A stretch of 64,000 bases of DNA, from the IMG/VR virus record IMGVR_UViG_3300027541_000009, positions 124,001 through 188,000 of that record; one strand, 5' to 3'. Both the position numbers and the translations under genes were made by a program. The stretch's first letter is position 1. Each line of letters opens with the position of its first letter. The notes beneath the pieces were generated by a model. It was not told the origin of the DNA and did not search any database. It saw only the letters and a list, made by a program, of their open reading frames with translations. Of this stretch, positions 9,347 to 31,680 are shown one piece after another.

Positions 9347-9353
9347 TTATTAT

Positions 9354-12971: not shown

Positions 12972-13001
12972 CAAAATTTAAGAATCTCTCTATACTAAAT
13001 A
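12968..13001 (+). promoter_or_regulatory. Sigma70-type promoter (TTGACA-17-TATACT) overlapping a T4-type late promoter (TAAATA) for the porin gene
   Basis: TTGACA 12968-12973, TATACT 12991-12996, TAAATA 12996-13001. Confidence 0.75.
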
Positions 13002-13063
13002 AGTACTTAAGAATTCAGTTGTAATTCTTAACATTTGTCCTATAGTACATAAAAAATAATTTT

Positions 13064-14560
13064 ATGAAACTCAAACAACTGATGCTTGCACCTGTTGCTC
13101 TGGGAATGGTTGCTCCTGTTGCTGCGAATGCGGCAGACCTTAACATGGCAGCAGTCAACCAATATGCAACCTCTGAGCAGGTCACAAGCGTCTCACAACT
13201 GTCTGATGTTCAACCTACGGATTGGGCATATCAGGCACTCAGCAACCTTGTAGAGCGTTATGGTTGCGTTGCTGGTTATCCAAATGGCACCTTCAGTGGT
13301 GGCAAAGCAATGACTCGCTATGAGGCAGCAGCACTTCTGAATGCTTGCTTGGATCGCGTAACAGAAAATACTGATGAACTCAAGCGTCTTGCTAATGAGT
13401 TCCGTGATGAACTCACTGTTATTCAAGGTAAGGTTGCAAGTTTGGAAACCAAAGTAGGTGCTCTTGAAGCAACTCAGTTCTCTACCACCACAAAACTTCG
13501 CGGTGAAGCAAACTTTGTTCTTGGTGGTGTAGATAATGCTTGGACTCCCGGTTCAACTGCAAGTACGAATGTTGGTAATACTGCATTCAACTATGATCTT
13601 CGCCTGAACTTTGACACATCGTTCACTGGTAAAGATCTGCTCCGCACTCGTCTGCGTTCTGGCAACTTCTCCAGTCAACCCTTCGGTTCTTCTTCTTCTC
13701 TGTTCAAACTGGATAAGGCAGAGAGTACCGCAAATGCAGTTACTCTCGACCGTCTCTACTATCAGTTCCCTGCACTTGCTAAGGGTGTAACTCTGACTGC
13801 TGGTGCTCTGGTTCGTAACACTGAAATGACCTGGATTCCTACTGCATATAAGTCGGAAGTTCTTGACTTCTTCCAACTTGCTGGTGCTCCTGGCGTCTAT
13901 AACAAGGCAACTGGTGCTGGTTTTGGTGCCCAGTGGTCACAAGGTAAGAAAGGTTTTGTTGCTGGTCTGAACTATGTTGCTCAAAATGGTGGCGATTCCA
14001 CCAAAGGTGAGTTCAACGAAAAGGGTGCCCTGAACACTCTGGCACAGATTGGTTATCGTGCTCCTAACTACGGTATTGCATTCGGTTATCGTTATGGTAC
14101 TGAAGGCACTCGTGTTCGCACCTTTAATGGTGTTGCTGGTGCTTCTGGTGCTCTTGCTCCAGGTCAAACCTCCAACGGTTATGCTCTGAGTGCTTACTGG
14201 CAACCCTCTAAGTCTGGCATTGTTCCCTCGGTATCTGCTGGTTATGGTTGGAACACTGTAAGTCTGAATGCTGAAGGTGCAGCAACTCCTGCTGGTGCTA
14301 CCGATTCTCAAACTTGGTATGCTGGTCTTCAGTGGAGTGATGTACTTGCCAAGGGTAATTCTGCAGGTTTTGCTGTGGGTCAACCTGGTAATGCAGAAGG
14401 ACTGGATGAGGATGCAACGATGTGGGAAGTATTCTACAAGTATCGTGTAAGCGATAACATTACTATTACTCCTGCAGTGTTCTATGCTTCTAACAACCAA
14501 GCATTCACTGATGCTTCTTCCAACTTTGGTGGTGTAATCCAAACCAAATTTACTTTCTGA
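13064..14560 (+). CDS. Cyanobacterial SomA/B-type outer-membrane porin with SLH domain
   Basis: Signal peptide, SLH (SDVQPTDWAYQAL...TRYEAAALLNACL), coiled coil, FSTTTKLRGE barrel start, terminal TKFTF. Confidence 0.9.
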   Translation: MKLKQLMLAPVALGMVAPVAANAADLNMAAVNQYATSEQVTSVSQLSDVQPTDWAYQALSNLVERYGCVAGYPNGTFSGGKAMTRYEAAALLNACLDRVTENTDELKRLANEFRDELTVIQGKVASLETKVGALEATQFSTTTKLRGEANFVLGGVDNAWTPGSTASTNVGNTAFNYDLRLNFDTSFTGKDLLRTRLRSGNFSSQPFGSSSSLFKLDKAESTANAVTLDRLYYQFPALAKGVTLTAGALVRNTEMTWIPTAYKSEVLDFFQLAGAPGVYNKATGAGFGAQWSQGKKGFVAGLNYVAQNGGDSTKGEFNEKGALNTLAQIGYRAPNYGIAFGYRYGTEGTRVRTFNGVAGASGALAPGQTSNGYALSAYWQPSKSGIVPSVSAGYGWNTVSLNAEGAATPAGATDSQTWYAGLQWSDVLAKGNSAGFAVGQPGNAEGLDEDATMWEVFYKYRVSDNITITPAVFYASNNQAFTDASSNFGGVIQTKFTF

Positions 14561-14579
14561 TAAACTGAAAGTGTGATAA

Positions 14580-15872
<1,293 letters not shown>

Positions 15873-15942
15873 ACCTTAACCTTCTCTTAGTGGACTTTAA
15901 TTTTCATTTCCTTTAGAATTTCTTTGTAGTTATTCACTTTTT

Positions 15943-16905
15943 ATGAAACTCAAAAACTTTATTTCTATTAGTCTTGCTCTTGCTCCTGCTGCTGCATTTG
16001 CTGGGACTACTTTGAACGGTGCAGGTGCCACCTTCCCAGCACCTCTTTATCAACGATGGTTCCAAGATTATGCACGAACTTCTGGGAGTAGGGTTAATTA
16101 TCAGTCCGTTGGTTCTGGTGCTGGTGTTCGTCAATTCCTTGCGGGAACGGTTGATTTCGCAGCAAGTGACGAACCCATCAAACCCGCAGAAGCGGCAAAA
16201 GTGAAGCGTGGTGTTGTCCAGATCCCTATGATTGGTGGAACGATTGCTGTTGCTTACAACAATCCTAGTTGCACTCTGAAACTCACTCAAAAGCAAACTG
16301 TTGATATTTTTGCTGGTCGTATTAAAGACTGGAAGCAAGTCGGATGTGCTGCTGGTCCGATGAAAGTTGTTCATCGTTCTGATGGTTCTGGAACTACTTT
16401 TGCATTCACCAACTCTTTGGAAGCATTTGGTGGTTGGACTTATGGTGTAGGTAAGTCTATTAATTGGCCTACTGGTGTTGGTTCAAAAGGTAACGAAGGT
16501 GTTTCTGGTACTATCAAAAACACTCCTGGTGCTATTGGTTATGTGAATACTGGATTTGTTCGTGCCAACAAACTTAAAGCAGCAGTTATTCAAAACAAGG
16601 CAGGTAAGTTTGTCGGTCCTTCCGCTGTGACTGGTGCTGCTGCTCTGAATAGCATTACTCTGGATGCAAACCTTGCTGGCGAAAATCCCAATCCCTCTGG
16701 AACAAATGCATATCCAATTTCTACTCTGACTTGGATCCTTGCATATAAGAAAGGTAATGGTGCTAAGACTGATGATATCCGTGCTGCTCTGAACTATGCT
16801 TTGAGCACAAAAGCACAGATGATTGCTGATGATTTGGGTTATGTTCCTCTTGCAGGTTCGGTTCTCAACAAATCACGCATTGCTGTTGGGCGTATTGGTC
16901 AGTAA
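15943..16905 (+). CDS. pstS: Phosphate ABC transporter substrate-binding protein
   Basis: GAGATFPAPLY, YQSVGSGAG, VDFAASD, HRSDGSGTT, KGNEGV, YPISTLTWIL. Confidence 0.96.
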   Translation: MKLKNFISISLALAPAAAFAGTTLNGAGATFPAPLYQRWFQDYARTSGSRVNYQSVGSGAGVRQFLAGTVDFAASDEPIKPAEAAKVKRGVVQIPMIGGTIAVAYNNPSCTLKLTQKQTVDIFAGRIKDWKQVGCAAGPMKVVHRSDGSGTTFAFTNSLEAFGGWTYGVGKSINWPTGVGSKGNEGVSGTIKNTPGAIGYVNTGFVRANKLKAAVIQNKAGKFVGPSAVTGAAALNSITLDANLAGENPNPSGTNAYPISTLTWILAYKKGNGAKTDDIRAALNYALSTKAQMIADDLGYVPLAGSVLNKSRIAVGRIGQ

Positions 16906-16936
16906 TTCCTAACAAAACTAGGTATAAATGACTACG

Positions 16937-16973
16937 AGGGGTGCTTGACACCCCTTTATTTTTGCTATATAAT
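16937..16973 (+). promoter_or_regulatory. Terminator hairpin fused to a sigma70 promoter (TTGACA-17-TATAAT) for hli
   Basis: AGGGGTG/CACCCCT stem plus T-rich tail; TTGACA 16945-16950, TATAAT 16968-16973. Confidence 0.75.
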
Positions 16974-17001
16974 TGTGTAACAATTCGTAATAAAACGAAA
17001 A

Positions 17002-17211
17002 ATGACTGTAACAAAAAACGAGTTTGGGCAAATGAATATGTTTGCCAAAGAACCCGCGATGTATATGACCAAGGAAGACCTTGAGCGTTATGGCATCGAA
17101 CCCTATGCAGAAAAAGCGGAGAAAATGAATGGACGCTGGGCTATGGTCGGCATTGTTGCTGGCGCTATTTCTTATGCTCTCACTGGGCACCTCTTCTTTG
17201 GAGTAGTTTGA
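17002..17211 (+). CDS. hli: High-light inducible protein
   Basis: AEKMNGRWAMVG chlorophyll-binding helix motif. Confidence 0.92.
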   Translation: MTVTKNEFGQMNMFAKEPAMYMTKEDLERYGIEPYAEKAEKMNGRWAMVGIVAGAISYALTGHLFFGVV

Positions 17212-17220
17212 GACTTGACA

Positions 17221-17307
17221 ATGACTTCAACTATCTTTACAATAACATCAGTTGCCTTTTTTGTTTTACTGGCAGCATCCGTTGAAAAAATTTGCGAGAC
17301 TTACTAA
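17221..17307 (+). CDS. 28-aa single-helix membrane peptide (not in ORF track)
   Basis: [28 protein letters not shown]; its TAA overlaps the petF ATG (TAATG). Confidence 0.6.
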
Positions 17308-17600
17308 TGACCGTTTTTAATGTCACTCTCCAATCCCCTGATGGCACCGAAACTACTATCAAATGTCCTGATGACCAGTACATCCTTGAAGCAGCAGAAG
17401 AGGCAGGTGTTGACCTCCCTTCATCGTGTAAGGCAGGCGCTTGCTCTGCCTGTGCTGGCAAACTCATTTCTGGCACCGTTGACAACGAAGAACAATCGTT
17501 CCTTGATGATGATCAACAAGCAGAAGGTTGGGTTCTCACTTGCGTTGCTTATCCCACAAGTGATTGTGTAATTCTTACTGAACAGGAAGAGAATCTGTGA
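17307..17600 (+). CDS. petF: Plant-type [2Fe-2S] ferredoxin
   Basis: [36 protein letters not shown]. Confidence 0.96.
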
Positions 17601-17875
17601 GCACTGCTGGTATGCTAGGGCAGTTCGCAATTGCCCTTCAAGAACTTGGGTGGAATGCTGATGATGAAATCTCGGTGGAGATTGGAGGAGTAGCAGTAAC
17701 AGGAACTGCTACCAGTCCAAATGCAAATCCAAAATGGGCAAAACCATTTGGAACTGTATCCTACCAAAACGATGCTTTCATCGTAATTAAAAACAAATCG
17801 AGGAACCCAGTTGTTCCTTCACAACCAAATCCTGAACTTAAACAACACCACCTTTATCAAGGAGAAAACAAATGA
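17597..17875 (+). CDS. Hypothetical protein
   Basis: GTG start overlapping the petF stop, tight operon packing. Confidence 0.6.
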
Positions 17876-17991
17876 AAAATCTTTTTACTGAAAAAGCTGA
17901 GCGTATTAATGGTTGGTTTGCAATGATTGGTTTTGTTGCAGCCGCTGGTTCTTATCTTACTACCGGTCAAATTATCCCCGGTGTGTTTTGA
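17872..17991 (+). CDS. hli: Second high-light inducible protein, 39 aa (not in ORF track)
   Basis: [39 protein letters not shown]; AGGAG RBS upstream. Confidence 0.92.
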   Translation: MKNLFTEKAERINGWFAMIGFVAAAGSYLTTGQIIPGVF

Positions 17992-18002
17992 TAGAGGTCA
18001 AA

Positions 18003-18530
18003 ATGCGTAAAGAGCAATATCAAGTTCCACAAGTACAATTTGTATTCCGTGAGAATAGTGAGTTTGTAAATCGTACATCCGCAGAACTATTCAATGGAAA
18101 GCGTGTGGTCATTTTTAGCCTGCCTGGTGCTTTCACTCCTACTTGCAGTGCCTATCAGCTACCTGGATTCGAAGAGAAATACGACGACTTTATTGGTAGT
18201 GGCATCGACGCTATTTACTGCATCTCTGTTAATGATGGGTTTGTGATGAATGCCTGGGCACAAGACCAGAACATTGAGAAAGTAAAACTCATTCCAGATG
18301 GAAATGCATATTTCACACGCTCTATGGGAATGCTTGTTAGTAAGTCCAACCTTGGTTTCGGTGATCGCTCTTGGCGTTATGCTGCAGTCGTGGATAACGG
18401 AATCATCGAGAAACTGTTTGTTGAACCAGGACAGCGCGATAATGCCCCTGAAGATCCTTATGTTGAGACTACTCCAGAAAATGTTTTTGAATATGTAAAA
18501 TCTACGGTTCGAGAAACTGTTACTGCCTGA
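18003..18530 (+). CDS. Peroxiredoxin (Prx5/redoxin family)
   Basis: FSLPGAFTPTCS, ISVNDGFVMNAW, GFGDRSWRYAAVV. True start is probably 18003 rather than 17913. Confidence 0.92.
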   Translation: MRKEQYQVPQVQFVFRENSEFVNRTSAELFNGKRVVIFSLPGAFTPTCSAYQLPGFEEKYDDFIGSGIDAIYCISVNDGFVMNAWAQDQNIEKVKLIPDGNAYFTRSMGMLVSKSNLGFGDRSWRYAAVVDNGIIEKLFVEPGQRDNAPEDPYVETTPENVFEYVKSTVRETVTA

Positions 18531-18538
18531 AGATAATC

Positions 18539-18563
18539 AAGCGCCCAAAAAGGCGCTTTTTTT
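18539..18563 (+). terminator. Intrinsic terminator, immediately followed by late promoter TAAATA (18565-18570)
   Basis: AAGCGCC/GGCGCTT stem plus T run. Confidence 0.75.
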
Positions 18564-18595
18564 ATAAATATCTTCAGTGTTTATAGAGATAATCC

Positions 18596-19267
18596 ATGAC
18601 CCTAGATCTTCATAACTTTTTTAAGTTTTATGATGATAGCAATTCAAATCATGTTGCAGCGGTTCAGTGGTTAGAAGATAATCTTCCTCCCCAATTTTTA
18701 GACGATGCGGAGACAGATTGGATTGGAATTTTTAGAACCAAACCCCCTACACCAGCGGTTCTAAACGTTCCATATTTCAATCAAGTAGATAACTACAGAG
18801 ATGCACATAGAACTTGCAACTCTTCATCGTGCGCTATGTGTCTTGCGTTCCTCAAGCCAGGAAGCATTAAAGGTGACGATGAATACGTCAAGAAAGTATT
18901 TGCGATTGGTGATACAACGGACCATGCCGTACAGACGAAGGTTCTGGCAGGTTATGGCGTTAAGTCACACTTTAGTTACAATCTATCTTTTGCTGATATT
19001 GATAAAAGTTTGGACGCTGGGAAGCCCGTTGTTATTGGCATACTCCATAGGGGTTCTCTTTCTGCACCTACTGGTGGGCACATGTGCGTTGTAATTGGTA
19101 AGACTCCAGACGGAAAAGGATATTACGTTAATGACCCATATGGATCATTGAATGATAACTATACTGGTCCTGTAACTAACGGTAAGAAAACAATCTATAC
19201 CAAAGCAGTTCTTAAGCACCGTTGGTGTCCAGGAGGCAATGATGGGTGGGGCAGAATCTTCGATTAG
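18596..19267 (+). CDS. C39-like cysteine peptidase (putative lysin) with N-terminal domain shared with the downstream lysozyme
   Basis: YFNQVDN..TCNSSSCAM (Gln, Cys), GHMCVVIG (His), VNDPYG (Asp). Confidence 0.75.
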   Translation: MTLDLHNFFKFYDDSNSNHVAAVQWLEDNLPPQFLDDAETDWIGIFRTKPPTPAVLNVPYFNQVDNYRDAHRTCNSSSCAMCLAFLKPGSIKGDDEYVKKVFAIGDTTDHAVQTKVLAGYGVKSHFSYNLSFADIDKSLDAGKPVVIGILHRGSLSAPTGGHMCVVIGKTPDGKGYYVNDPYGSLNDNYTGPVTNGKKTIYTKAVLKHRWCPGGNDGWGRIFD

Positions 19268-19365
19268 ATTTAAGGCAAAAATGCTTAAAGTGATCAAAGA
19301 ACTTACAAATCATGGAAAGCACGTAGAAGCAAACGAACTTTATCAACGGTATTTCGGAGAAAACA

Positions 19366-20034
19366 ATGGCAAGAATCGATTTACATAACTTCTTCAAGTT
19401 TTATGACGAGAAGAACCCCAACCACGTTAAAGCAGTGCAGTGGTTGGAAGATAACCTCCCAGTCAAATATCTAGAAGATAATATTGATTGGGCGGAGATT
19501 TATAGAGGAAAAAAGACTAGTGCTGCACCAGCAACCACTGCTGCTGCAGCTCCTGTAACAGGTGGTGATGATGTTCCTCAAATGGGCATCAAGTTAATCA
19601 AAGAGTTTGAGGGATGTCATCTGAAGGCATACCCAGACCCCTTGACTGGTGGACTTCCAATCACTATTGGTTGGGGATCTACTCGCAAGAAGGATGGATC
19701 ACCCTTCAAAATGGGTGATACCCTAACACAGGCAGAAGCAGATGAACTTCTTATCGAACAATGTAAGAAAGAGTTCCTTCCTGCTCTGCGTAAAATCCCT
19801 CATTGGAATGAAATGTCAGATGGAAAAAGAGGCGCTCTGCTCAGCTTTGCTTATAATCTTGGTGCCGGTTTTTACGGTGGCGATAACTTTAATACTATTA
19901 CTAAACGCTTGAAAAATAAGGAGTGGGATTTAGTTCCTGATGCTCTTTATCTCTATCGCAATCCTGGTTCTAATGTAGAAGCAGGACTTGCACGTAGAAG
20001 AAAAGCAGAGGGTGAATCCTGGAAGAAGGGATAA
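19366..20034 (+). CDS. GH24 phage lysozyme (endolysin)
   Basis: IKEFEGCHLKAYPD..TIGWGST, ALLSFAYNLG, GLARRRKAE. Confidence 0.92.
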   Translation: MARIDLHNFFKFYDEKNPNHVKAVQWLEDNLPVKYLEDNIDWAEIYRGKKTSAAPATTAAAAPVTGGDDVPQMGIKLIKEFEGCHLKAYPDPLTGGLPITIGWGSTRKKDGSPFKMGDTLTQAEADELLIEQCKKEFLPALRKIPHWNEMSDGKRGALLSFAYNLGAGFYGGDNFNTITKRLKNKEWDLVPDALYLYRNPGSNVEAGLARRRKAEGESWKKG

Positions 20035-20037
20035 ATA
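20032..20037 (+). promoter_or_regulatory. T4-type late promoter TAAATA upstream of the structured leader of the 708-aa gene
   Basis: TAAATA matches the gp55 consensus core. Confidence 0.55.
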
Positions 20038-20092
20038 GTTACAATCATAACTGATTCTTGATCTTAAATGGTCTGAATCTACATAGTCCGAA

Positions 20093-20173
20093 TCCTCTGT
20101 GATTCGGTGATTACTTTACTTTTAAACATAACTTCGGTTTGTTTTGTTTAGTACACACTGAACTCACAGAGGA
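20093..20173 (+). ncRNA. Candidate cis-regulatory leader hairpin sequestering the RBS of the 708-aa gene
   Basis: TCCTCTGTGA-TTCGGTG (20093-20109) pairs with CACTGAA-C-TCACAGAGGA (20156-20173); internal C(UUCG)G hairpin. Confidence 0.55.
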
Positions 20174-20179
20174 CTTTCT

Positions 20180-22306
20180 ATGTCTTACGCTACAAGGGCG
20201 CTTGCTGTAGCGTCTGCTCTTTTAATGGGGGCATCAACAGCAGCATTAGCAGAAACAATATCTGGAACAGATTTCGAGACTGGAGATACTTCAGGATGGA
20301 ATACTGGAACTCAAACAGGAACATTAGATGCCACAATCGACGGAGGAGGAACTGGTGTTAGTGTCGTAGATAATCCAGTTATCTTTAATGCCGGTTCTTT
20401 CCCAGCACAAGGAAGTCCAACATTACAAGATGGTTCTCCTAATCCATATTACGCACCCGCAGTAACACCAACCACTTGGGAGTTTGCTCCTTACGGAACC
20501 GCAGGTGCAGCACTACAACCAAATGGACAGCAAACATTCGACCAGGCAACAGAAGCACTTGGTTTAACCGCAGAACAAAATCAAGCAATAAGAGACCTTC
20601 TTATTCAACAGCAACAAGCATCTGGACTTGGAAATCCAAATCCTACTGATGCTGCTTGGATTACAAAATCAGTCACTTTGGAGACTGGAAAAGTTTATAC
20701 AATGTCTTGGAACTACATTGGAACGGACTATGTTCCTTTCAATGATGGTTCTATTACTTCACTTGTTTATCAAGGAACTGGAACTTCTCCATCAGTAACA
20801 GTTAATAACCAACTTCAAAACTATGCATTACTTGGATTTACTAATCCAGGAACTGGTGATTATTCAACAGGTTCTTTTGGTTCTACTGGATGGCAGTATT
20901 CAACTTATCAAGTAGGTGCTAATGGTGATTATCTCTTGGGATTTGCAGTATTCAACCTTGGAGATACCGCACTATCACCAGTTCTTTTAGTTGATAGTCA
21001 ACCTGGAACTACAACAGCAAATGGTGAAGAATTCACTCCTGTTGCTCCAAATAATCCAGATGCTCCATCTGTTGATGAGGTAGCACCAACTCCAACTCCT
21101 ACACCAGAGCCAACTCCTGAACCTACACCAGAGCCAACTCCCGAACCAACTCCTGAACCTACACCAGAGCCAACTCCCGAACCAACTCCTGAACCTACAC
21201 CAGAACCAGAACCAACACCAGAGCCAACTCCTGAACCCACTCCTGCTCCTGCTCCTGAACCTACACCAGAGCCAACTCCTGAACCACAACCACCAACATT
21301 ATTAAACTCTGTGACTGTTCCTGCACCAGGACTTCCAGTTGTTGTTACCACAGAAGTAACTCATAAGGCATCTGAGAAGGATGGAGTTCAAAAGATTAGA
21401 AGAGACTTTGCAACCACAACTCAAACTCCTTTATTAAGACAGGATACTTATAGTGATGGAACCGTTGTAGCATCATTACTTCTTTCTGTTGATATTGAAA
21501 ATAATCATGATGTTCTTTCTGGACGCACTGACCAGCATGAAGTTTTAGATAAGATTGGTGGTGGATTACAAAATCTGTTTATTTACGAACCAACTGAACC
21601 AACCACAGACAGAGTAAGAGTATTCAATAACAACTATTATGCCTGGTCTTCTGGTGATTATGGATACAATGGTAAGACTTTAATCATTGGTGGTGGATTA
21701 GAGATTGATATTAAACCAACCTGGACTATAGGTGGTCAATATAATAATATGAACATTGATTTGGGTGGTGTTGATAGTACTTCTAAACTCCTCAAAAATC
21801 ATTATGGAATATTCAATATGTTCCGTGGAAATACATTCTCACTCTTAACAAATGCTGGATACTCCCAGAACAAATATAATGTATCCAGAAATGTTCAGAG
21901 TGTCTTCAATAATGAAAGTTCAACAGAAGGAAAAGAGTGGTTTGTAAATAACAGACTATTCTGGCATCTCAATAAGAATGTAACTCCATTTGTTGGATAC
22001 ACTGTTGGTAACTATCAGAGAGATGGATTTACTGAGAAAGGTTCTATTCAATCCAGAAGAACTGTTGATGCTATAAACAAAACTTCACATTCTGGTGAGG
22101 TAGGTCTAAATATTTCACACCGTTTTGGTGGAAAGAAAAAGGATTTATTTGGAGTAACTATTGGTGGTTCTTATGAAACCAGTGGAATGATTGAAGCATC
22201 TGCTTCTGTTGATTATAAGGAAATGGTTATTATTGAAGGAATACATCAAATTAATGATGGAGTTTCTAACACAGCAGTATCTGCAAAACTTAAATTTAAG
22301 TTCTGA
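20180..22306 (+). CDS. Exported protein with Pro/Thr/Glu repeat linker and autotransporter-like C-terminal beta-barrel
   Basis: Signal peptide (ALA-E), beta-rich N-domain, (PEPT)n, amphipathic beta-strands ending KLKFKF. Confidence 0.6.
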   Translation: MSYATRALAVASALLMGASTAALAETISGTDFETGDTSGWNTGTQTGTLDATIDGGGTGVSVVDNPVIFNAGSFPAQGSPTLQDGSPNPYYAPAVTPTTWEFAPYGTAGAALQPNGQQTFDQATEALGLTAEQNQAIRDLLIQQQQASGLGNPNPTDAAWITKSVTLETGKVYTMSWNYIGTDYVPFNDGSITSLVYQGTGTSPSVTVNNQLQNYALLGFTNPGTGDYSTGSFGSTGWQYSTYQVGANGDYLLGFAVFNLGDTALSPVLLVDSQPGTTTANGEEFTPVAPNNPDAPSVDEVAPTPTPTPEPTPEPTPEPTPEPTPEPTPEPTPEPTPEPTPEPEPTPEPTPEPTPAPAPEPTPEPTPEPQPPTLLNSVTVPAPGLPVVVTTEVTHKASEKDGVQKIRRDFATTTQTPLLRQDTYSDGTVVASLLLSVDIENNHDVLSGRTDQHEVLDKIGGGLQNLFIYEPTEPTTDRVRVFNNNYYAWSSGDYGYNGKTLIIGGGLEIDIKPTWTIGGQYNNMNIDLGGVDSTSKLLKNHYGIFNMFRGNTFSLLTNAGYSQNKYNVSRNVQSVFNNESSTEGKEWFVNNRLFWHLNKNVTPFVGYTVGNYQRDGFTEKGSIQSRRTVDAINKTSHSGEVGLNISHRFGGKKKDLFGVTIGGSYETSGMIEASASVDYKEMVIIEGIHQINDGVSNTAVSAKLKFKF
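21086..21286 (+). repeat. Degenerate 12-bp tandem repeat encoding (PEPT)n
   Basis: Units such as CCAGAGCCAACT, CCTGAACCTACA and CCCGAACCAACT. Confidence 0.95.
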
Positions 22307-26882: not shown

Positions 26883-26934
26883 GGTAAACAAATGTTACGG
26901 AACGCAACGTTCCCTTAACATTGTTAGACACCCG

Positions 26935-27032
26935 ATAACCGAGACCTATGGGTGTATAAATTACGTCTCTCATATCCCCGCTAAGGGTGCGGGGAGCATA
27001 GTATCTCCACCATTTCCCTGATGGTCTTACTA
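26935..27032 (+). ncRNA. PhotoRC-II-like structured psbA leader RNA
   Basis: GAGAC/GTCTC pairing, CCCCGC-TAAGGGT-GCGGGG hairpin and CCAT/ATGG hairpin directly 5' of a phage psbA; similarity to the motif is recalled, not searched. Confidence 0.6.
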
Positions 27033-27045
27033 ACTGCTTAAAACA

Positions 27046-28125
27046 ATGACTGCTACAATTTCACGTCAACGACAATCGAATACTTGGGAACAATTCTGCA
27101 ACTGGGTCACATCAACCGATAATCGTCTTTATGTCGGTTGGTTCGGAGTCCTCATGATTCCTTGCCTGCTTGCTGCTACGACTTGTTTCATCATCGCATT
27201 CATCGGTGCTCCCCCAGTGGACATTGATGGTATCCGTGAACCCGTTGCTGGTTCACTCATGTACGGAAACAACATCATCTCTGGTGCTGTTATTCCTTCG
27301 TCCAACGCGATTGGACTGCACTTTTATCCCATCTGGGAAGCTGCTTCGCTTGATGAGTGGCTTTACAACGGTGGTCCTTTCCAACTTGTAGTGTTCCACT
27401 TCCTTATCGGTATCTACGCTTACATGGGTCGTGAATGGGAACTTTCATACCGTCTTGGTATGCGTCCTTGGATCTGTGTTGCTTACTCTGCACCTGTGGC
27501 TGCTGCTTCTGCTGTGTTCCTGGTGTATCCTTTCGGTCAAGGTTCTTTCTCTGATGCGATGCCTCTGGGTATCTCTGGTACGTTCAACTATATGCTTGTG
27601 TTCCAGGCAGAGCACAACATCCTGATGCACCCCTTCCACATGCTTGGTGTGGCTGGTGTCTTTGGAGGTTCTCTGTTCAGTGCTATGCACGGTTCTCTGG
27701 TTACTTCCTCACTGGTTCGTGAAACCACTGAGAACGAGTCACAGAACTATGGTTACAAGTTTGGTCAAGAAGAAGAGACCTATAACATCGTTGCTGCTCA
27801 CGGTTATTTCGGACGCCTTATTTTCCAATATGCTTCCTTTAATAACTCACGTTCGCTGCACTTCTTCCTTGCTGCATGGCCTGTAGTTGGTATCTGGTTC
27901 ACTGCTCTTGGTGTTAGCACCATGGCATTCAACCTCAACGGTTTCAACTTTAACCAGTCCATCATTGATTCACAGGGTCGTGTCCTCAACACTTGGGCAG
28001 ATGTTCTGAACCGTGCTGGACTCGGGCTCGAGGTGATGCACGAAAGGAATGCACACAATTTCCCTCTGGATCTTGCTGCTGCTAGCAACACTCCTGTTGC
28101 CCTTACTGCACCCGCAATCGGTTGA
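27046..28125 (+). CDS. psbA: Photosystem II D1 protein, intronless
   Basis: Unmistakable D1 sequence, with E130, H332, E333, H337 and A344. Confidence 0.99.
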
Positions 28126-28151
28126 GTTTTATAAAAACTGAATAAGAATGA

Positions 28152-28177
28152 AGAGACCTTTACAGGTCTCTTTTTTT
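28152..28177 (+). terminator. Intrinsic terminator after psbA
   Basis: AGAGACCT-TTAC-AGGTCTCT plus T run. Confidence 0.85.
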
Positions 28178-28222
28178 ATGGTATTATTCATAAATAGTTC
28201 CATACCAAACTTCCATACCATA

Positions 28223-28585
28223 ATGAAAACTTGTAGTAGATGTGGAGAAACAAAAGAACTTGATAGTTTCTCTAAAAGAAGTAGTAGACCTTCTGGGGTT
28301 CAATCAAAGTGTAAGGATTGTGAACGGGAAGTTCGTAGGCAATATTATAAGACTCACGAATATGCTAGACGCAGATTTAAACTTACAGAAGACCAATATA
28401 ATGACCTAATGAAGAATGAGAACTGCCAAATATGTGATGTGGAACTAACCAAGAAGTGTATAGACCACTGCCACTCTACAAATAAGGTTCGTGGTGTTCT
28501 CTGTAACAACTGCAACACTGCATTAGGTCTTGTAGGAGACAACATCAGCACTCTTCAAAAGATGATAGAATACCTAAATAACTAA
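28223..28585 (+). CDS. Endonuclease VII-family free-standing homing endonuclease (F-CphI-like)
   Basis: CSRC...CKDC zinc finger; CQIC...IDHCHSTNKVRGVLCNNCNTALG His-Me motif; late promoter TAAATA at 28191-28196; position directly after psbA. Confidence 0.8.
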   Translation: MKTCSRCGETKELDSFSKRSSRPSGVQSKCKDCEREVRRQYYKTHEYARRRFKLTEDQYNDLMKNENCQICDVELTKKCIDHCHSTNKVRGVLCNNCNTALGLVGDNISTLQKMIEYLNN

Positions 28586-28600
28586 AAAGTATTCATAAAA

Positions 28601-29335
28601 ATGGACGCACAAGAACTTCGCAATCTTCAAGAAGCATATATGGAAGTTGTTGAAAATCAGCAACTGGATGAAATCTCTGATAGAAAAGTCAAAGGAATGT
28701 TAAGAAAGAGAGATGCACAAGATGTAGATAGTGGTGGTATAAGTGGTGCTTGGATGGCAAGACGCCGCGCTCATCAGGCAGCAGCAAGAAGAAATGTAAG
28801 AACAGGTTCAAATGTTCGTGTCGATTCTGATTTAGCAAAAGAAGAAGTAGATGTTTACGATCTAATTCTTTCACACTTACTTGATGAAGGATATGCTGAT
28901 ACTCAACAAGCAGCAGAAGCAATTATGGTGAATATGAGTGAAGAGTGGAGAGACAATATTATAGAAAGAGAGGATAGTCCTTATGAGAAAGCATCTGATG
29001 CTGCATTAGATAAAAGATATGGATATGGTAGAGCATCTGGTGATAAGCGTTCTTTCGGTAGAGCAGCAAATCGTTCATCTGCTGCCGCTGCCCTTCGTGC
29101 TATTAGAAGAGGTGAAAGAAGTGGTAGTGGAACTTCAAGAGAAGCAGGTGCTGATGCAGTTCATCAGGGTTGGGCAAGAACTGCTAAAACAAGTACAGAC
29201 CAAACACCAGAAAAGAAACAAAGAAGAGCAAAACTTGCTAATACATCATATTCAAATCTTCCCGATGATGAAAAGGAAAAGGATAGAGTATCTTTTGATG
29301 CTGTAAGAGCAACTTATAATAGAAACAAAAGATAA
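28601..29335 (+). CDS. Hypothetical late protein with T4-like cyanophage repeat motifs
   Basis: MDAQELRNLQEAY and DLILSHLLDEGYADT..AAEAIMVNMSEEW segments; late promoter at 28575-28580. Confidence 0.7.
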   Translation: MDAQELRNLQEAYMEVVENQQLDEISDRKVKGMLRKRDAQDVDSGGISGAWMARRRAHQAAARRNVRTGSNVRVDSDLAKEEVDVYDLILSHLLDEGYADTQQAAEAIMVNMSEEWRDNIIEREDSPYEKASDAALDKRYGYGRASGDKRSFGRAANRSSAAAALRAIRRGERSGSGTSREAGADAVHQGWARTAKTSTDQTPEKKQRRAKLANTSYSNLPDDEKEKDRVSFDAVRATYNRNKR

Positions 29336-29367
29336 TAAAAAAGGAGGGATAAAACCCTCCTTTAACT

Positions 29368-29571
29368 TTATTTGGAACTTACAAAATCATTAATGATTTC
29401 TGCTTGTTCTAGAACTTGATTAAGTGTTGGAAACTCTGGATAATCCATTGCTACTTTTTTGTTCTCATCTTCATTCCAACGAACAGCAGTATCATATTCC
29501 ATGCTAAACTGGTCATTAAGCATATTATATGCTTGCTTAAAGATTTCAAATCGAAGTTCATAAGGTGTCAT
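29368..29571 (-). CDS. Hypothetical 67-aa protein with its own sigma70-like promoter
   Basis: MTPYELRFEIFKQA...; AGGAG RBS; minus-strand TTGACT (29641-29636) and TATAGT (29619-29614). Confidence 0.65.
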   Translation of the reverse strand: MTPYELRFEIFKQAYNMLNDQFSMEYDTAVRWNEDENKKVAMDYPEFPTLNQVLEQAEIINDFVSSK

Positions 29572-29671
29572 AGATATTCTCCTAATGTGTGTGATGTGTG
29601 TTTCCACTAAGAAACTATATCATAAATTATCAAAAAGTCAAGTAATAATAAAAACCTATCCTCAGTTTTCT

Positions 29672-29713
29672 GAAGCAACTCCTGTTGCTCTCACTGCACC
29701 TTCAATTGGTTGA
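29672..29713 (+). pseudogene. psbA: Stranded duplicate of the psbA 3' end ([13 protein letters not shown])
   Basis: Matches the D1 C-terminal extension ([11 protein letters not shown]) of the intact gene; followed by a shared AACTGAATAA and its own terminator. Confidence 0.85.
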
Positions 29714-29738
29714 TAACAACTGAATAACTGATATAATT

Positions 29739-29764
29739 AGAGGGTGTAACAACCCTCTTTTTTT
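29739..29764 (+). terminator. Intrinsic terminator after the psbA remnant
   Basis: AGAGGGT-GTAACA-ACCCTCT plus T run. Confidence 0.8.
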
Positions 29765-29887
29765 ATGTCTCATAATAATCAACATCATCCTATGGAACCC
29801 TGGATCATCTGGGCAGGTGTAGGTATGATGGTATTTACAGTTCTTGTATTTGTCTTATTCACTCTCGGTCAGATGTATTGGGGATAA
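29765..29887 (+). CDS. 40-aa membrane peptide (not in ORF track)
   Basis: MSHNNQHHPMEPWIIWAGVGMMVFTVLVFVLFTLGQMYWG. Confidence 0.5.
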   Translation: MSHNNQHHPMEPWIIWAGVGMMVFTVLVFVLFTLGQMYWG

Positions 29888-29900
29888 GCACAAACACTCA

Positions 29901-29934
29901 TTGACTACTTTGTTAAGGAATGTTAAGATAAATA
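29901..29934 (+). promoter_or_regulatory. psbD promoter: TTGACT-17-TAAGAT overlapping late TAAATA
   Basis: TTGACT 29901-29906, TAAGAT 29924-29929, TAAATA 29929-29934. Confidence 0.7.
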
Positions 29935-29955
29935 TGAGAAATAACTAAGGAGGTT

Positions 29956-31017
29956 ATGACTTCTTCTACACTTTCACAACCTATTCAACAACGAGGATGG
30001 TTTGATGTACTCGATGACTGGCTTAAAAGAGACCGTTTCGTTTTTGTTGGCTGGTCTGGACTTCTTCTTTTTCCCACTGCTTATCTTGCTCTTGGTGGTT
30101 GGATTACTGGGACAACTTTCGTCACGAGTTGGTATACTCACGGGCTTGCGAGTTCCTATCTTGAGGGTGCAAACTTTCTTACTGCAGCAGTTAGTACTCC
30201 AGCAGATTCTATGGGTCATTCTCTTCTTCTGCTCTGGGGTCCTGAGGCTCAAGGGGATATCGTCAGGTGGTTCCAACTTGGGGGACTATGGACTTTTGTG
30301 GCGCTCCACGGGGCCTTTAGTCTGATCGGATTTATGCTTCGCCAGTTTGAGATCTCACGACTGGTAGGCATCCGTCCTTACAACGCAATTGCATTCTCTG
30401 GTCCCATCGCAGTGTTTGTGAGCGTCTTCCTGATGTACCCTCTGGGTCAATCCAGTTGGTTCTTTGCACCTTCCTTTGGTGTTGCTGCTATCTTCAGGTT
30501 CCTTCTGTTCCTTCAGGGTTTTCACAACTGGACTCTTAACCCATTTCATATGATGGGTGTTGCTGGTATACTGGGTGGAGCACTGCTCTGTGCTATTCAC
30601 GGAGCAACTGTAGAAAACACACTATTTGAAGATAGTGATCAAGCAAATACATTCAAGGCATTCGAACCAACACAAGAGGAAGAAACCTATTCAATGGTTA
30701 CTGCTAACCGTTTCTGGTCGCAAATCTTTGGAATTGCTTTTAGTAACAAGCGTTGGTTACATTTCTTTATGCTCTTTGTTCCCGTCATGGGTCTCTGGAC
30801 ATCTTCTATCGGGATTATCGGTCTTGCTCTCAATCTTCGTGCTTACGACTTTGTTAGTCAGGAGATTGAAGCAGCCGTCAATCCGGAATACGAAACTTTC
30901 TACACGAAGAATATACTTCTTAACGAAGGGCTTCGTGCTTGGATGGCTCCCGTAGACCAACCACATGAAAATTTTGTTTTTCCAGAGGAAGTTTTGCCTC
31001 GGGGCAACGCACTTTGA
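29956..31017 (+). CDS. psbD: Photosystem II D2 protein
   Basis: Unmistakable D2 sequence ending EVLPRGNAL; AGGAGG RBS. Confidence 0.99.
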
Positions 31018-31021
31018 TTTT

Positions 31022-31048
31022 AAAGACCTCATTGTTGGGGTCTTTTTT
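31022..31048 (+). terminator. Intrinsic terminator after psbD
   Basis: AAAGACCTC/GGGGTCTTT stem plus T run. Confidence 0.75.
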
Positions 31049-31110
31049 ATTTACATAAGACCCAAAGTATGATAAAATATAAATAATAATAGATATTCAA
31101 AGTTAGGATA

Positions 31111-31680
31111 ATGCCCTTAAATAATAAATCAAAACCTTGTGGTGCTTTGATTGGTAAAAAATTTGGAAAACTTACTGTCCTGAAAGAAGAAGTAGTCTTT
31201 AAGAGTGGGAAGAATAGAGTTTATTCAACTTGTAAATGTGAATGTGGTGGAGAAAAAACTTGCGAGAGATATGGTCTTATGAATGGTTCAACTACTAGTT
31301 GTGGGTGTGTTAGGAGAGAAACTACTATTGCTTTTAATAAAACTAAAAAGAAACCAGAAGGTGAATTAAAAAAAGACGATAGAAGATATAGTATGTTTCA
31401 TAATGCTCAACATAGGGCAAAAAGAAAGGGTATTCCATTTAGTATAACTATAGATGATATTATTATTCCAGAAACTTGTCCTTTACTTGGAATACCTCTT
31501 GTATCTACTAATGATAAAAGAGATCCAAGAAATCCTAGTTTAGATCAAAAGGTTCCTGGTAAAGGATATACCCCCGATAATATTTGGGTTATATCTTCAA
31601 GAGCGAATGCCCTAAAATGGGACGCATCCCTACAAGAATTAGAACTCCTAGTAGAAAACCTCAAATGCTTCTCATCTTAG
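31111..31680 (+). CDS. HNH-like free-standing (putative homing) endonuclease
   Basis: KKFGKLTV..CKCECG..NGSTTSCGC N-domain; CPLLG..PSLDQKVPGKGYTPDNIWVISSRANALK His-Me-like core; late promoter at 31080-31085. Confidence 0.7.
   Translation: MPLNNKSKPCGALIGKKFGKLTVLKEEVVFKSGKNRVYSTCKCECGGEKTCERYGLMNGSTTSCGCVRRETTIAFNKTKKKPEGELKKDDRRYSMFHNAQHRAKRKGIPFSITIDDIIIPETCPLLGIPLVSTNDKRDPRNPSLDQKVPGKGYTPDNIWVISSRANALKWDASLQELELLVENLKCFSS

What the first reader, a model, noticed from the sequence alone, without database searches (positions are those of the whole stretch)
29672..29764. Orphaned copy of the psbA 3' end marks the far edge of a ~1.55-kb inserted cassette
Seen: 29672-29713 encodes [13 protein letters not shown] and the intact psbA ends [13 protein letters not shown] (to 28125). 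Both are followed within about 15 nt by AACTGAATAA and then by separate terminators. Between the copies lie the EndoVII gene, a 244-aa late ORF and a divergent 67-aa ORF. Inference: the cassette entered by recombination inside psbA, bringing a new immune 3' end and stranding the original. This is a molecular scar of a homing event that also carried passenger genes.
Basis: partly seen in the sequence, partly recalled or inferred. Interest (0 to 1): 0.7.

Follow-up and report, generated by a model that had tools for sequence, protein, structure and literature searches.

The report
Stranded psbA tail marks endonuclease cassette
A 42-base leftover of the end of a cyanophage photosynthesis gene (psbA) lies 1.5 kb downstream of the intact gene and marks where a block carrying a selfish DNA-cutting enzyme gene and two hitch-hiking genes was spliced in by imprecise repair; the scar is clear and well documented here, but scars of this type are already known.

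Summary
Window 29676-29713 matches the last 12 codons plus stop of psbA (31/36 nt identical to 28090-28125). It is still joined to psbA's native downstream module: a sigma70-like promoter overlapping the stop codon, hairpin T2, a 40-aa ORF and psbD.

The far edge is an in-frame join at a 6-nt microhomology (CTGAAG, 29670-29675). It links psbA codons 346-348 to codon 8-10 of an unrelated small gene (orfX, start codon now ATA). In other phages orfX sits divergent to the 67-aa gene, far from psbA.

The endonuclease belongs to the F-CphI/Endo VII family. In about 45 loci it lies roughly 100 nt after psbA, usually without any remnant. The remnant traces to one founding event (two contig types, same junction).

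The passenger block plus remnant later moved horizontally: it is 93-100% identical between two phages whose backbones are about 70% identical, and they carry different endonucleases.

Likely cause: endonuclease-induced break repair with homology on one side only. Target immunity is suggested, not shown. The closest analogue is the fungal mitochondrial C-terminal replacement by mobile endonuclease ORFs.

The parts
27046..28125 (+). Intact, intron-less psbA (D1, 359 aa), ending ...[16 protein letters not shown]
   Evidence: ORF list; 92-98% aa identity to cyanophage psbA.
28017..28076 (+). Homologue of the 60-bp F-CphI substrate of S-BM4 psbA, spanning the group I intron insertion site (about 28047-28056). 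This is the presumed endonuclease target, present here in a variant form.
   Evidence: Substrate oligo from PMC6083498 Table S3; 14 of 60 nt differ. Arg334 codon is AGG here and CGC in the substrate. Endonuclease-associated SNPs cluster at 28023-28066.
28090..28145 (+). Repeat copy 1: the last 12 psbA codons, the stop, and the AACTGAATAA motif
   Evidence: 31/36 nt identical to 29678-29713. The motif occurs exactly twice in the window.
28150..28173 (+). Hairpin T1 (GAGACC...GGTCTC type) with T-run. It is followed by an early-like promoter (28159-28187) and a weakened late-promoter-like CATAAATA (28189-28196).
   Evidence: A T1-type hairpin follows psbA in 22 of 27 loci with this endonuclease type.
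28223..28585 (+). Free-standing homing-endonuclease gene (HEG-1), F-CphI/Endo VII family, 120 aa
   Evidence: Pfam PF02945 E=6e-18; PHROG 2633 E=7e-37. 38% identical to F-CphI, with the counterparts of C84, D101, H102, R110 and N118 conserved (PMC6083498). Relatives lie about 100 nt after psbA in about 45 loci.
28575..28579 (+). Junction J1 (TAAAT). The end of the endonuclease ORF runs into the truncated late-promoter leader of the 244-aa gene. This is an older junction shared by several endonuclease variants.
   Evidence: The native leader TATAAATAACTAAAAAGTATT... is seen upstream of family members away from psbA. The same 23-mer lies behind other Endo VII genes.
28601..29335 (+). 244-aa passenger ORF, a viral protein family of unknown function with many paralogues
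   Evidence: 448 relatives in IMG/VR. No Pfam hit, only weak PHROG hits; protein-atlas hits are all 'hypothetical protein'. It looks like a recombinant of the two tandem paralogues seen in L022.
29340..29363 (.). Bidirectional terminator hairpin between the convergent 244-aa and 67-aa ORFs
   Evidence: z = -4.4.
29368..29571 (-). 67-aa passenger ORF (orf67), with a sigma70-like promoter at 29641-29614 on the minus strand
   Evidence: 196 relatives in IMG/VR, almost all away from psbA. Promoter scan 10/12 with TG. Single copy in the near-identical 205-kb contig.
29648..29675 (+). orfX': the first 9 codons of a small gene that is natively divergent to orf67 (MKT[YF]QQF[SN]ED...). The start codon is mutated from ATG to ATA (29648-29650).
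   Evidence: In non-psbA loci (L221, L224, L232, L290, L241, L233), homology to the window runs from about 29330 to 29675 and then continues into a 65-122-aa ORF.
29670..29675 (+). Junction J2: microhomology CTGAAG shared by orfX codons 8-10 and psbA codons 346-348. The fusion is in frame.
   Evidence: orfX-side homology ends at 29675. psbA-side homology begins at 29670-29678.
29676..29713 (+). Orphaned psbA 3' end (codons 348-359 and the stop). It encodes only the cleaved C-terminal extension of pre-D1 and no mature D1 residues.
   Evidence: An orphan copy occurs in only two contig types, both with the same junction.
29710..29737 (+). Sigma70-like promoter (TTGATA-16 nt-TATAAT, extended -10). 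Its -35 box overlaps the psbA/remnant stop codon and AACTGAATAA is its spacer.
   Evidence: Promoter scan 11/12. The 21-mer is conserved directly after intact psbA in about 23 distinct relatives.
29739..29764 (+). Hairpin T2 with T-run, immediately after the -10 box. Together with the promoter it forms a PeSL-like promoter/terminator module.
   Evidence: z = -4.6.
29765..29887 (+). 40-aa membrane-type ORF (orf40), native neighbour between psbA and psbD
   Evidence: PHROG 7358 E=5e-17. Same position in relatives.
29956..31017 (+). psbD (D2). Its 5' end is the right limit of the block exchanged between phage backbones.

Best explanation
SHOWN
- Window 29676-29713 is the stranded last 12 codons plus stop of a cyanomyovirus psbA.
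- It is still attached to its native downstream module: a promoter overlapping the stop codon, hairpin T2, orf40 and psbD.
- On its left it is fused in frame, through a 6-nt microhomology (CTGAAG), to the first 9 codons of an unrelated small gene, orfX.
- orfX, orf67, the bidirectional terminator and the 244-aa family gene form a contiguous neighbourhood at other, non-psbA sites of cyanophage genomes.
- Upstream of that block sits an F-CphI-family free-standing homing endonuclease gene with its own hairpin T1. This unit is tightly linked to the 3' end of psbA in many phages.

INFERRED: how the scar arose
1. An endonuclease-less phage (psbA-promoter/T2-orf40-psbD) was cut by the endonuclease of a co-infecting phage, near the intron-insertion site (codons 334-337).
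2. The left end was repaired by homology within psbA. It copied the donor's psbA end, T1, the endonuclease gene and whatever lay behind it: 244-aa gene, orf67 and the start of orfX.
3. The donor had no homology to the recipient's right side. The copied strand was therefore joined by microhomology to the right break end, which had been nibbled back about 20-35 nt.
4. This stranded the recipient's last 13 codons.

AFTER THE FOUNDING EVENT
The 1.55-kb cassette is flanked by homology on both sides: psbA on the left, and remnant plus promoter/T2-orf40-psbD on the right. It can therefore spread by ordinary homing or homologous exchange, passengers included. Exchange of the passenger-remnant block between different backbones, and replacement or loss of the endonuclease, are both shown by relatives.
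For: Native state:
- About 23 distinct endonuclease-less loci have intact psbA, then within 2-5 nt the identical 21-mer, T2, orf40 and psbD.
- Colinear identity with the window is 86-92% starting at 29670-29678.

Junction:
- In loci far from psbA, homology to the window runs 29330-29675 and continues into orfX.
- The fusion is in frame, with ATG mutated to ATA.

Endonuclease:
- Endo VII motif present, with all residues shown essential in F-CphI conserved.
- It lies about 100 nt after psbA in about 45 loci.
- T1 is linked to it in 22 of 27 loci.
- T1 and the 5' part of the gene are 94-97% identical to simple psbA-T1-HEG-orf40 loci.

Target:
- The F-CphI substrate homologue is 28017-28076.
- 9 of the 17 psbA positions most associated with the endonuclease fall in nt 978-1021.
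- The Arg334 codon is AGR in 15/16 loci with the endonuclease and 10/28 without.
- J2 lies 16-35 nt downstream of this cluster.

Variable right junctions in other loci, as expected for variably resected break ends:
- at the -35 box (L092, L119/L125, L134);
- in the spacer (L016);
- at the -10 box (L300/L302).

Single founding event: the orphan C-terminus occurs in only two contig types, with the same junction.

Later mobility:
- The block 28880-29979 is 93-100% identical to L093, against about 85% for psbA/psbD and about 70% for the backbone.
- L022 carries a different endonuclease (32% aa).
- L016 has lost the gene, keeping 12-15 nt of its tail.

Physical reality.
Against: - No donor with psbA-T1-endonuclease-244-orf67-intact orfX was found among the 76 orf67 loci examined (only the best 80 of 196 were kept). 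A multi-step history or template switching therefore remains possible.
- The cleavage site and specificity of this endonuclease are unknown. It is only 38% identical to F-CphI, and the original mapping paper (Zeng 2009) was not available.
- The mosaic test failed to single out the window's psbA 3' end as foreign. The last 180 nt are about 80% identical in all comparably related pairs.
- The last 60 nt of psbA are only 75% identical to loci that share 95% identical T1/endonuclease, so later gene conversion has blurred the left side.
- The SNP association is not corrected for shared ancestry, and the endonuclease-less sample was selected through the 21-mer.
- Because the block moved horizontally, the event may not have happened in this genome's own lineage.
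Confidence: 0.68

Rival explanations
1. A single, ordinary homing event moved a pre-assembled cassette (new psbA 3' end, endonuclease and both passenger genes) into psbA by homologous recombination on both sides. This genome's own original 3' end was left behind.
For: The right edge lies inside psbA, and the remnant keeps its native downstream context. T1 is linked to the endonuclease. The target-region variants are associated with the endonuclease. Once the scar exists, the cassette does have homology arms on both sides.
Against: The far junction is a 6-nt microhomology with the 5' end of an unrelated gene, not a homologous crossover. Normal spread of this endonuclease leaves no remnant. Endonuclease and passengers have different histories, and the passenger-remnant block was exchanged between dissimilar backbones. 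The remnant here therefore need not be this genome's original end.
Confidence: 0.2
2. Promoter/stem-loop (PeSL)-type shuffling without endonuclease involvement. A circular or linear intermediate carrying one psbA-end/promoter copy recombined with the resident psbA end/promoter (Campbell-type single crossover). This duplicated the homologous segment on both sides of the insert.
For: Both repeat copies comprise the psbA end plus a promoter-like spacer (AACTGAATAA) and a hairpin. Such promoter-plus-hairpin modules (PeSLs) mediate insertion, deletion and mini-circle formation in T4-type phages (PMC2839356). Several other inserts end exactly at the -35 box, spacer or -10 box of this module. A native short paralogue of the 244-aa family ends with the same 13 nt as psbA (L052).
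Against: This does not explain how orfX' first became fused to psbA codon 346, which still needs an illegitimate event. The 29-mer promoter has no other copy in the window within 3 mismatches, so it is not a dispersed repeat family here. Every insert at this site contains an Endo VII gene, or carries or adjoins traces of one.
Confidence: 0.1
3. Local tandem duplication of the psbA end followed by divergence and insertion, or an assembly chimera.
For: Two direct copies lie 1.55 kb apart.
Against: The two copies are followed by different hairpin types, each matching a distinct allele class in other phages. The junction is to orfX, not to psbA-flanking sequence. The arrangement recurs in 5 + 2 independent contigs and more than 20 runs, with unitigs bridging the junction.
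Confidence: 0.02

Closest known systems
F-CphI of cyanophage S-PM2 (free-standing Endo VII-family homing endonuclease next to psbA; 'collaborative homing', Zeng et al. 2009; Fang et al. 2018, PMC6083498)
   Same: The gene family and catalytic residues are the same. The position, directly downstream of psbA behind a hairpin, is the same. The presumed target lies around the psbA intron-insertion site. The gene is present only sporadically among relatives.
   Different: Only 38% aa identity. psbA here has no intron, so any self-protection must come from sequence variants in the target (inferred only). Here the gene is followed by a passenger block and a stranded psbA end, which S-PM2 lacks (one search found no orf244 or remnant in L005).
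Mobile-endonuclease ORF (mORF) C-terminal replacement in fungal mitochondria (Allomyces macrogynus atp6; Glomus atp6/atp9/cox2/nad3; PMC3630166)
   Same: A gene's 3' end is present twice. A functional 'inserted' copy is contiguous with the gene, then comes an endonuclease ORF, then the displaced native C-terminus. The native copy matches relatives' intact genes.
   Different: There the inserted C-terminus and the endonuclease are one element, often in frame with the host gene. Here the endonuclease is free-standing behind a terminator with its own promoters, and 1.1 kb of unrelated cargo lies between it and the native end. The native end is fused to the 5' end of another gene by microhomology.
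Intron-less homing of free-standing endonucleases in T4 (e.g. SegF; Belle et al. 2002, as cited in PMC3037559)
   Same: An optional endonuclease gene sits between conserved genes. It is thought to cut the endonuclease-less allele of a neighbouring gene and to spread by break repair, with co-conversion of flanking markers.
   Different: Classical cases leave no duplicated gene fragment. Activity, target and marker exclusion are untested here.
PeSL promoter-early/stem-loop cassettes of T4-type phages (PMC2839356, PMC4122927)
   Same: A strong sigma70-like promoter is combined with a terminator hairpin in an intergenic position at the edge of variable inserts. Several insert junctions fall inside the module.
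   Different: The hairpin lies after the -10 box rather than between or over the boxes. The module is specific to the psbA-orf40 junction and is not a dispersed repeat in this window. Promoter and terminator function are untested.

Membership tests
F-CphI / Endo VII-motif homing endonucleases | Endo VII catalytic motif with the residues shown essential in F-CphI (C84, D101, H102, R110, N118) | tested here: met
   Pfam PF02945 E=6e-18. The alignment with F-CphI shows all five positions conserved; residue list from PMC6083498.
F-CphI / Endo VII-motif homing endonucleases | Free-standing gene adjacent to its target gene, with patchy presence among close relatives | tested here: met
   About 45 loci have a homologue about 100 nt after psbA. 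About 23 distinct related loci lack it. One locus shows its deletion and another its replacement.
F-CphI / Endo VII-motif homing endonucleases | Site-specific cleavage of the endonuclease-less allele, with resistance of its own allele | not testable with these tools
   Indirect only. Endonuclease-associated variants cluster at psbA nt 978-1021, inside the F-CphI substrate homologue.
mORF-type C-terminal replacement (Allomyces/Glomus gene hybrids) | Duplicated gene 3' end flanking an endonuclease ORF, with the downstream copy being the native one | tested here: met
   The copies are at 28090-28125 and 29678-29713. The downstream copy is colinear with relatives' intact psbA end and its native neighbours.
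mORF-type C-terminal replacement (Allomyces/Glomus gene hybrids) | The upstream (inserted) C-terminus is demonstrably foreign | tested here: inconclusive
   The T1 hairpin after it is linked to the endonuclease. However, the psbA 3' 180 nt are equally diverged in all comparable pairs and are finely mosaic.
mORF-type C-terminal replacement (Allomyces/Glomus gene hybrids) | Inserted C-terminus and endonuclease ORF form one contiguous element, often in phase with the host gene | tested here: not met
   A stop codon, hairpin T1 and promoter-like sites separate psbA from the endonuclease gene.
PeSL regulatory cassettes | Sigma70-like promoter plus stable stem-loop in an intergenic region bordering variable genes | tested here: met
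   Promoter scan 11/12 with extended -10 at 29710-29737. Hairpin at 29739-29758, z = -4.6. Insert junctions of other loci fall inside the module.
PeSL regulatory cassettes | Many dispersed, similar copies within one genome's hyperplastic regions | tested here: not met
   There is no second copy of the 29-mer within 3 mismatches in the 64-kb window. Only copy 1 shares the AACTGAATAA spacer.

The most novel reading that the evidence does not exclude
The stranded psbA tail may be more than a scar. It would be the start of the right-hand homology arm that lets a psbA-targeting homing endonuclease drive a 1.1-kb cargo (an early and a late gene of unknown function) into naive photosynthesis loci. 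On this reading the psbA 3' end and its promoter module form a general endonuclease-powered entry point for new genes into cyanophage genomes, with right junctions set by how far the break end was resected. A further possibility is that a late transcript from the orfX promoter, ending at T2, yields a small sense RNA carrying the psbA tail.
Probability: 0.3. Interest if true: 0.6.

Novelty: new member of a known kind. Interest (0 to 1): 0.45.

Why it matters
psbA is the best-known host-derived metabolic gene of marine cyanophages, and its patchwork evolution is usually ascribed to homologous exchange.

This locus gives a base-pair-resolved example of how a psbA-linked homing endonuclease can also bring in unrelated genes by imprecise break repair. 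It also shows that the resulting composite then spreads between quite different phages, while the endonuclease itself is swapped or lost.

The locus supplies concrete junctions, natural 'before' and 'after' alleles, and candidate target variants. These make homing, cargo hitch-hiking and target immunity directly testable in cyanophage crosses.

Tried and rejected
- **Mosaic / co-conversion test.** The window's nearest relatives are 92-95% identical over psbA nt 1-900 but only 70-88% over the last 180 nt. A control showed the same drop in all comparably related pairs (79.5% vs 91.5%). It therefore says nothing specific about this genome.
- **ORF 29585-29713 as a gene.** I considered the 42-aa ORF (MCVMCV...) as real and rejected it. 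It has no ribosome-binding site and overlaps the orf67 promoter. The true reading is orfX' (start lost) fused to the psbA tail.
- **Faster decay of the remnant.** Compared with L093, the remnant has 5/38 mismatches against 26/542 in its flanks. This is only weakly significant (p=0.044) and is not used.
- **Function of the 244-aa and 67-aa ORFs.** Pfam, PHROGs and the protein atlas gave nothing informative.
- **Rfam.** No RNA family hit in the cassette above threshold. The only real hit is PhotoRC-II upstream of psbA.
- **Zeng et al. 2009 (F-CphI cut-site mapping).** The paper is not held. The target was placed using the 60-bp substrate in PMC6083498.
- **Search for a donor** with psbA-endonuclease-244-orf67-intact orfX. 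None was found among the loci kept.
- **First reading of junction J1.** I first took it as specific to this lineage. One search showed that the same endonuclease tail plus leader occurs behind other Endo VII variants, so J1 is older and shared.
- **Metatranscriptome word depths** (psbA far above endonuclease, which is above the passengers). Noted, but not used as proof of transcription, because contig depths and DNA carry-over are uncontrolled.

Full report
**What is there**

The window comes from a 99-kb IMG/VR contig of a T4-like cyanomyovirus. The features in order are:
- psbA (27046-28125), intact and intron-less;
- hairpin T1 (28150-28173);
- a 120-aa Endo VII-family gene (28223-28585);
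- a 244-aa ORF (28601-29335);
- a bidirectional terminator (29340-29363);
- a 67-aa ORF on the minus strand (29368-29571);
- the psbA-like remnant (to 29713);
- hairpin T2 (29739-29758);
- a 40-aa ORF (29765-29887);
- psbD (29956-31017).

The two psbA ends share 31 of 36 nt. AACTGAATAA occurs exactly twice in 64 kb, once after each copy. The remnant is recognised as a psbA 3' end by searches within the contig (E=1.8e-8) and against other phages.

The arrangement is identical in four other IMG/VR contigs. It is held by at least 20 riverine metagenome and metatranscriptome runs. Error-free unitigs bridge it in two DNA and two RNA runs.

**The native state**

The 21-mer that follows the remnant (AACTGAATAACTGATATAATT) was searched in IMG/VR. 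In about 23 distinct loci without any endonuclease, an intact psbA stops 2-5 nt before this 21-mer. The same hairpin, the 40-aa ORF and psbD then follow.

Alignment of these loci to the window starts at 29670-29678 and runs colinearly to psbD at 86-92% identity. Some of these psbA genes end ...[13 protein letters not shown]. Neither of the stated refutations was met.

The conserved motif is a sigma70-like promoter (TTGATA-16 nt-TATAAT with extended -10; 11/12). Its -35 box overlaps the psbA stop codon, and the hairpin follows the -10 box directly.
- Inference: transcripts from psbA end at the hairpin, while transcripts started at this promoter begin inside its left arm and read on into orf40.
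- This resembles the PeSL promoter/terminator cassettes of T4-type phages (PMC2839356). However, it is not a dispersed repeat in this window.

**The far junction**

orf67 has 196 relatives in IMG/VR, and almost all are far from psbA. In several such loci, nucleotide homology to the window runs from the bidirectional terminator (about 29330) through orf67 and its promoter to 29675. It then continues into a small divergent gene that begins MKT[YF]QQF[SN]ED... (65-122 aa).

In the window the first nine codons of this gene (orfX) are present at 29648-29675. Its ATG has changed to ATA. At CTGAAG (29670-29675) the sequence switches in frame to psbA codons 346-348 onward.

The right edge of the insert is therefore an illegitimate, microhomology-mediated join between the 5' end of orfX and psbA. 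Only the cleaved C-terminal extension of pre-D1 is stranded. The 42-aa ORF 29585-29713 is an accident of this fusion.

**The endonuclease**

- The 120-aa protein is 38% identical to F-CphI of S-PM2. It keeps the counterparts of all residues shown to be essential there (C84, D101, H102, R110, N118).
- Homologues of at least 40% identity lie about 100 nt after the psbA stop in about 45 IMG/VR loci and in S-SKS1.
- In 22 of 27 loci of this subtype, psbA is followed by the T1-type hairpin (GAGACC...GGTCTC) and a TATAAATA late promoter, never by T2.
- The commonest form is psbA-T1-endonuclease-orf40-psbD, with no remnant. Ordinary homing, with homology on both sides, therefore leaves no scar.
- A scan of all 299 fetched loci found orphan psbA C-termini in only two contig types, the window type and the L022 type. 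Both have the same KTYPQFSEA|TP junction. This points to one founding event.

**Target and immunity**

The 60-bp F-CphI substrate from S-BM4 psbA (PMC6083498 Table S3) corresponds to window 28017-28076 and spans the intron-insertion site. The window differs from it at 14 of 60 positions. Five of these lie in the 12 nt around the insertion site and are synonymous (Arg334 is CGC in the substrate and AGG here).
- Across loci, AGR at Arg334 occurs in 15/16 intron-less psbA genes followed by this endonuclease subtype, and in 10/28 without an endonuclease.
- Of the 17 psbA positions most associated with endonuclease presence, nine fall in nt 978-1021.

This fits a target in that interval and protective variants in carriers. 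It is uncorrected for shared ancestry and untested biochemically. Junction J2 lies 16-35 nt downstream of this cluster, where a slightly resected right break end would be.

**History of the pieces**

The region is a fine mosaic.
- *Endonuclease and T1.* T1 and the 5' two-thirds of the endonuclease gene are 94-97% identical to simple-form loci (L147, L149). The last 60 nt of psbA are only 75% identical to those loci, and the endonuclease 3' end 76-79%.
- *Endonuclease tail and leader.* The endonuclease tail and the leader of the 244-aa gene (junction J1, TAAAT at 28575-28579) recur behind other Endo VII variants. Natively, the 244-aa family has a TATAAATA late promoter, which is truncated here.
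- *L022/L093 type.* This phage has the same 244-aa C-terminal part, orf67, orfX', remnant, promoter/T2 and orf40 at 93-100% identity. Its psbA and psbD are about 85% identical to the window's, its backbone beyond psbD about 70%, and its endonuclease is a different Endo VII gene (32% aa). The passenger-remnant block has therefore moved horizontally as a unit, and the endonuclease has been replaced.
- *L016.* This locus has lost the endonuclease but keeps 12-15 nt of its tail. It lacks orf67 and the remnant.
- *Other loci.* Other loci carry other endonuclease/244-like inserts. Their right junctions fall at the -35 box (L092, L119/L125, L134), in the spacer (L016) or at the -10 box (L300/L302) of the same module.

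**Mechanism**

The best reading is as follows.
1. An endonuclease-less psbA was cut near the intron-insertion site.
2. Repair from an endonuclease-bearing donor copied the psbA end, T1, the endonuclease gene and the donor's downstream genes.
3. Lacking right-hand homology, the copied strand was sealed by microhomology to the nibbled right break end.
4. Afterwards the cassette has homology arms on both sides and can spread with its passengers.

Shown: the native state, both junctions, the linkage of T1 to the endonuclease, a single origin, and later horizontal movement. Inferred: the break, its position, one-sided repair, and immunity.

No donor with intact orfX behind a psbA-linked endonuclease was found. 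The mosaic test for a foreign 3' end was uninformative, because the psbA 3' 180 nt are about 80% identical in all comparable pairs.

Rivals:
- PeSL/Campbell-type shuffling without an endonuclease (possible for later moves, but it does not create the orfX-psbA fusion);
- tandem duplication or assembly artefact (excluded).

**Comparison with what is known**

- The endonuclease is a new member of the F-CphI family at the known psbA site.
- The scar works like the C-terminal replacements by mobile endonuclease ORFs in fungal mitochondria (Allomyces atp6; Glomus atp6/atp9/cox2/nad3; PMC3630166). In those, an inserted C-terminus and an endonuclease ORF precede the displaced native C-terminus.
- It differs in three ways: the endonuclease is free-standing behind a terminator, unrelated cargo lies in between, and the native end is fused to another gene's start.
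- I found no report of such a stranded psbA end in cyanophages. The ingredients are established: homing endonucleases as makers of recombinogenic regions and mobile cassettes in cyanophages (PMC3037559; PMC10448857).

**Verdict**

The finding is real, well resolved and mechanistically informative, but it is of a known kind.

Noticed in passing
window 26916-27009 (+): PhotoRC-II RNA motif (Rfam RF01717, 84 bits, E=2e-14) lies directly upstream of psbA. This is the known cis-regulatory element of cyanophage psbA genes.
   Followed up: no
window 31111-31680 (+): A second free-standing endonuclease-like gene (189 aa) lies just downstream of psbD behind a hairpin. It hits PHROG 3322 'endonuclease' (E=2e-31) and also Endo VII/HNH PHROGs. 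It is 47% identical to the 'endonuclease' at the same position after psbD in S-SKS1.
   Followed up: partly
psbA nt 901-1080 (window 27946-28125) across loci: Among related cyanophages, the last 180 nt of psbA are far more diverged at the DNA level (about 80%) than the first 900 nt (about 92%), although the protein is conserved. This could reflect repeated co-conversion or an arms race around the endonuclease target.
   Followed up: partly
L022/L093 (IMGVR_UViG_3300021961_008723) and L016/L094 (IMGVR_UViG_3300044617_000333): Endonuclease turnover at the same site. L022 has a different Endo VII gene (32% aa) in front of the same passenger block. L016 has a deletion that leaves only ...MIEYLNN* (12-15 nt of the endonuclease tail) between T1 and the 244-aa gene.
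   Followed up: yes
L301 (IMGVR_UViG_3300042987_003051), L300/L302: Chimeric endonucleases. An Endo VII gene only 43% identical overall shares an identical C-terminal approximately 25 codons (…ALGLVGDNISTLQKMIEYLNN*) and downstream leader with the window's gene, which suggests recombination within the conserved catalytic motif. L300/L302 carry a triplicated TACCTAAA at the same spot.
   Followed up: partly
L052 vs psbA ends; L119, L125: A native short paralogue of the 244-aa family ends ...IIG* with ATTGGTTGATAAA, the same 13 nt as the end of psbA plus the -35 box. In L119/L125 such a paralogue is joined to the psbA-downstream promoter exactly there.
   Followed up: partly
L104, L126, L131, L164, L165, L171, L173, L180 (IMG/VR loci): These psbA genes are interrupted by one to several large insertions (introns, some long enough to carry ORFs), at residues about 61, 77, 108, 185, 231, 298 and 334-337. 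Several have an Endo VII gene downstream.
   Followed up: no
window 28659-28871: Low-depth unitigs in two DNA runs join 28659 to 28871, skipping 211 nt inside the 244-aa ORF (shorter side only 24 nt). This may be a variant or a cross-link to a paralogue.
   Followed up: no
window 26900-31200 in RNA runs X4, X18: Metatranscriptome unitig word depth is 6,000-21,000 over psbA, 1,000-2,400 over T1/endonuclease, and 280-470 over the passengers and remnant. DNA runs are flat (about 40 and about 110). This suggests strong termination at T1, but contig depths and DNA carry-over are uncontrolled.
   Followed up: partly
window 29765-29887: Homologues of the 40-aa ORF lie next to petE (plastocyanin) rather than psbA in S-RSM4, S-H9-1, S-RIM2 and S-H25 (about 72% nt identity). 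This small gene is therefore itself mobile among photosynthesis-gene neighbourhoods.
   Followed up: no
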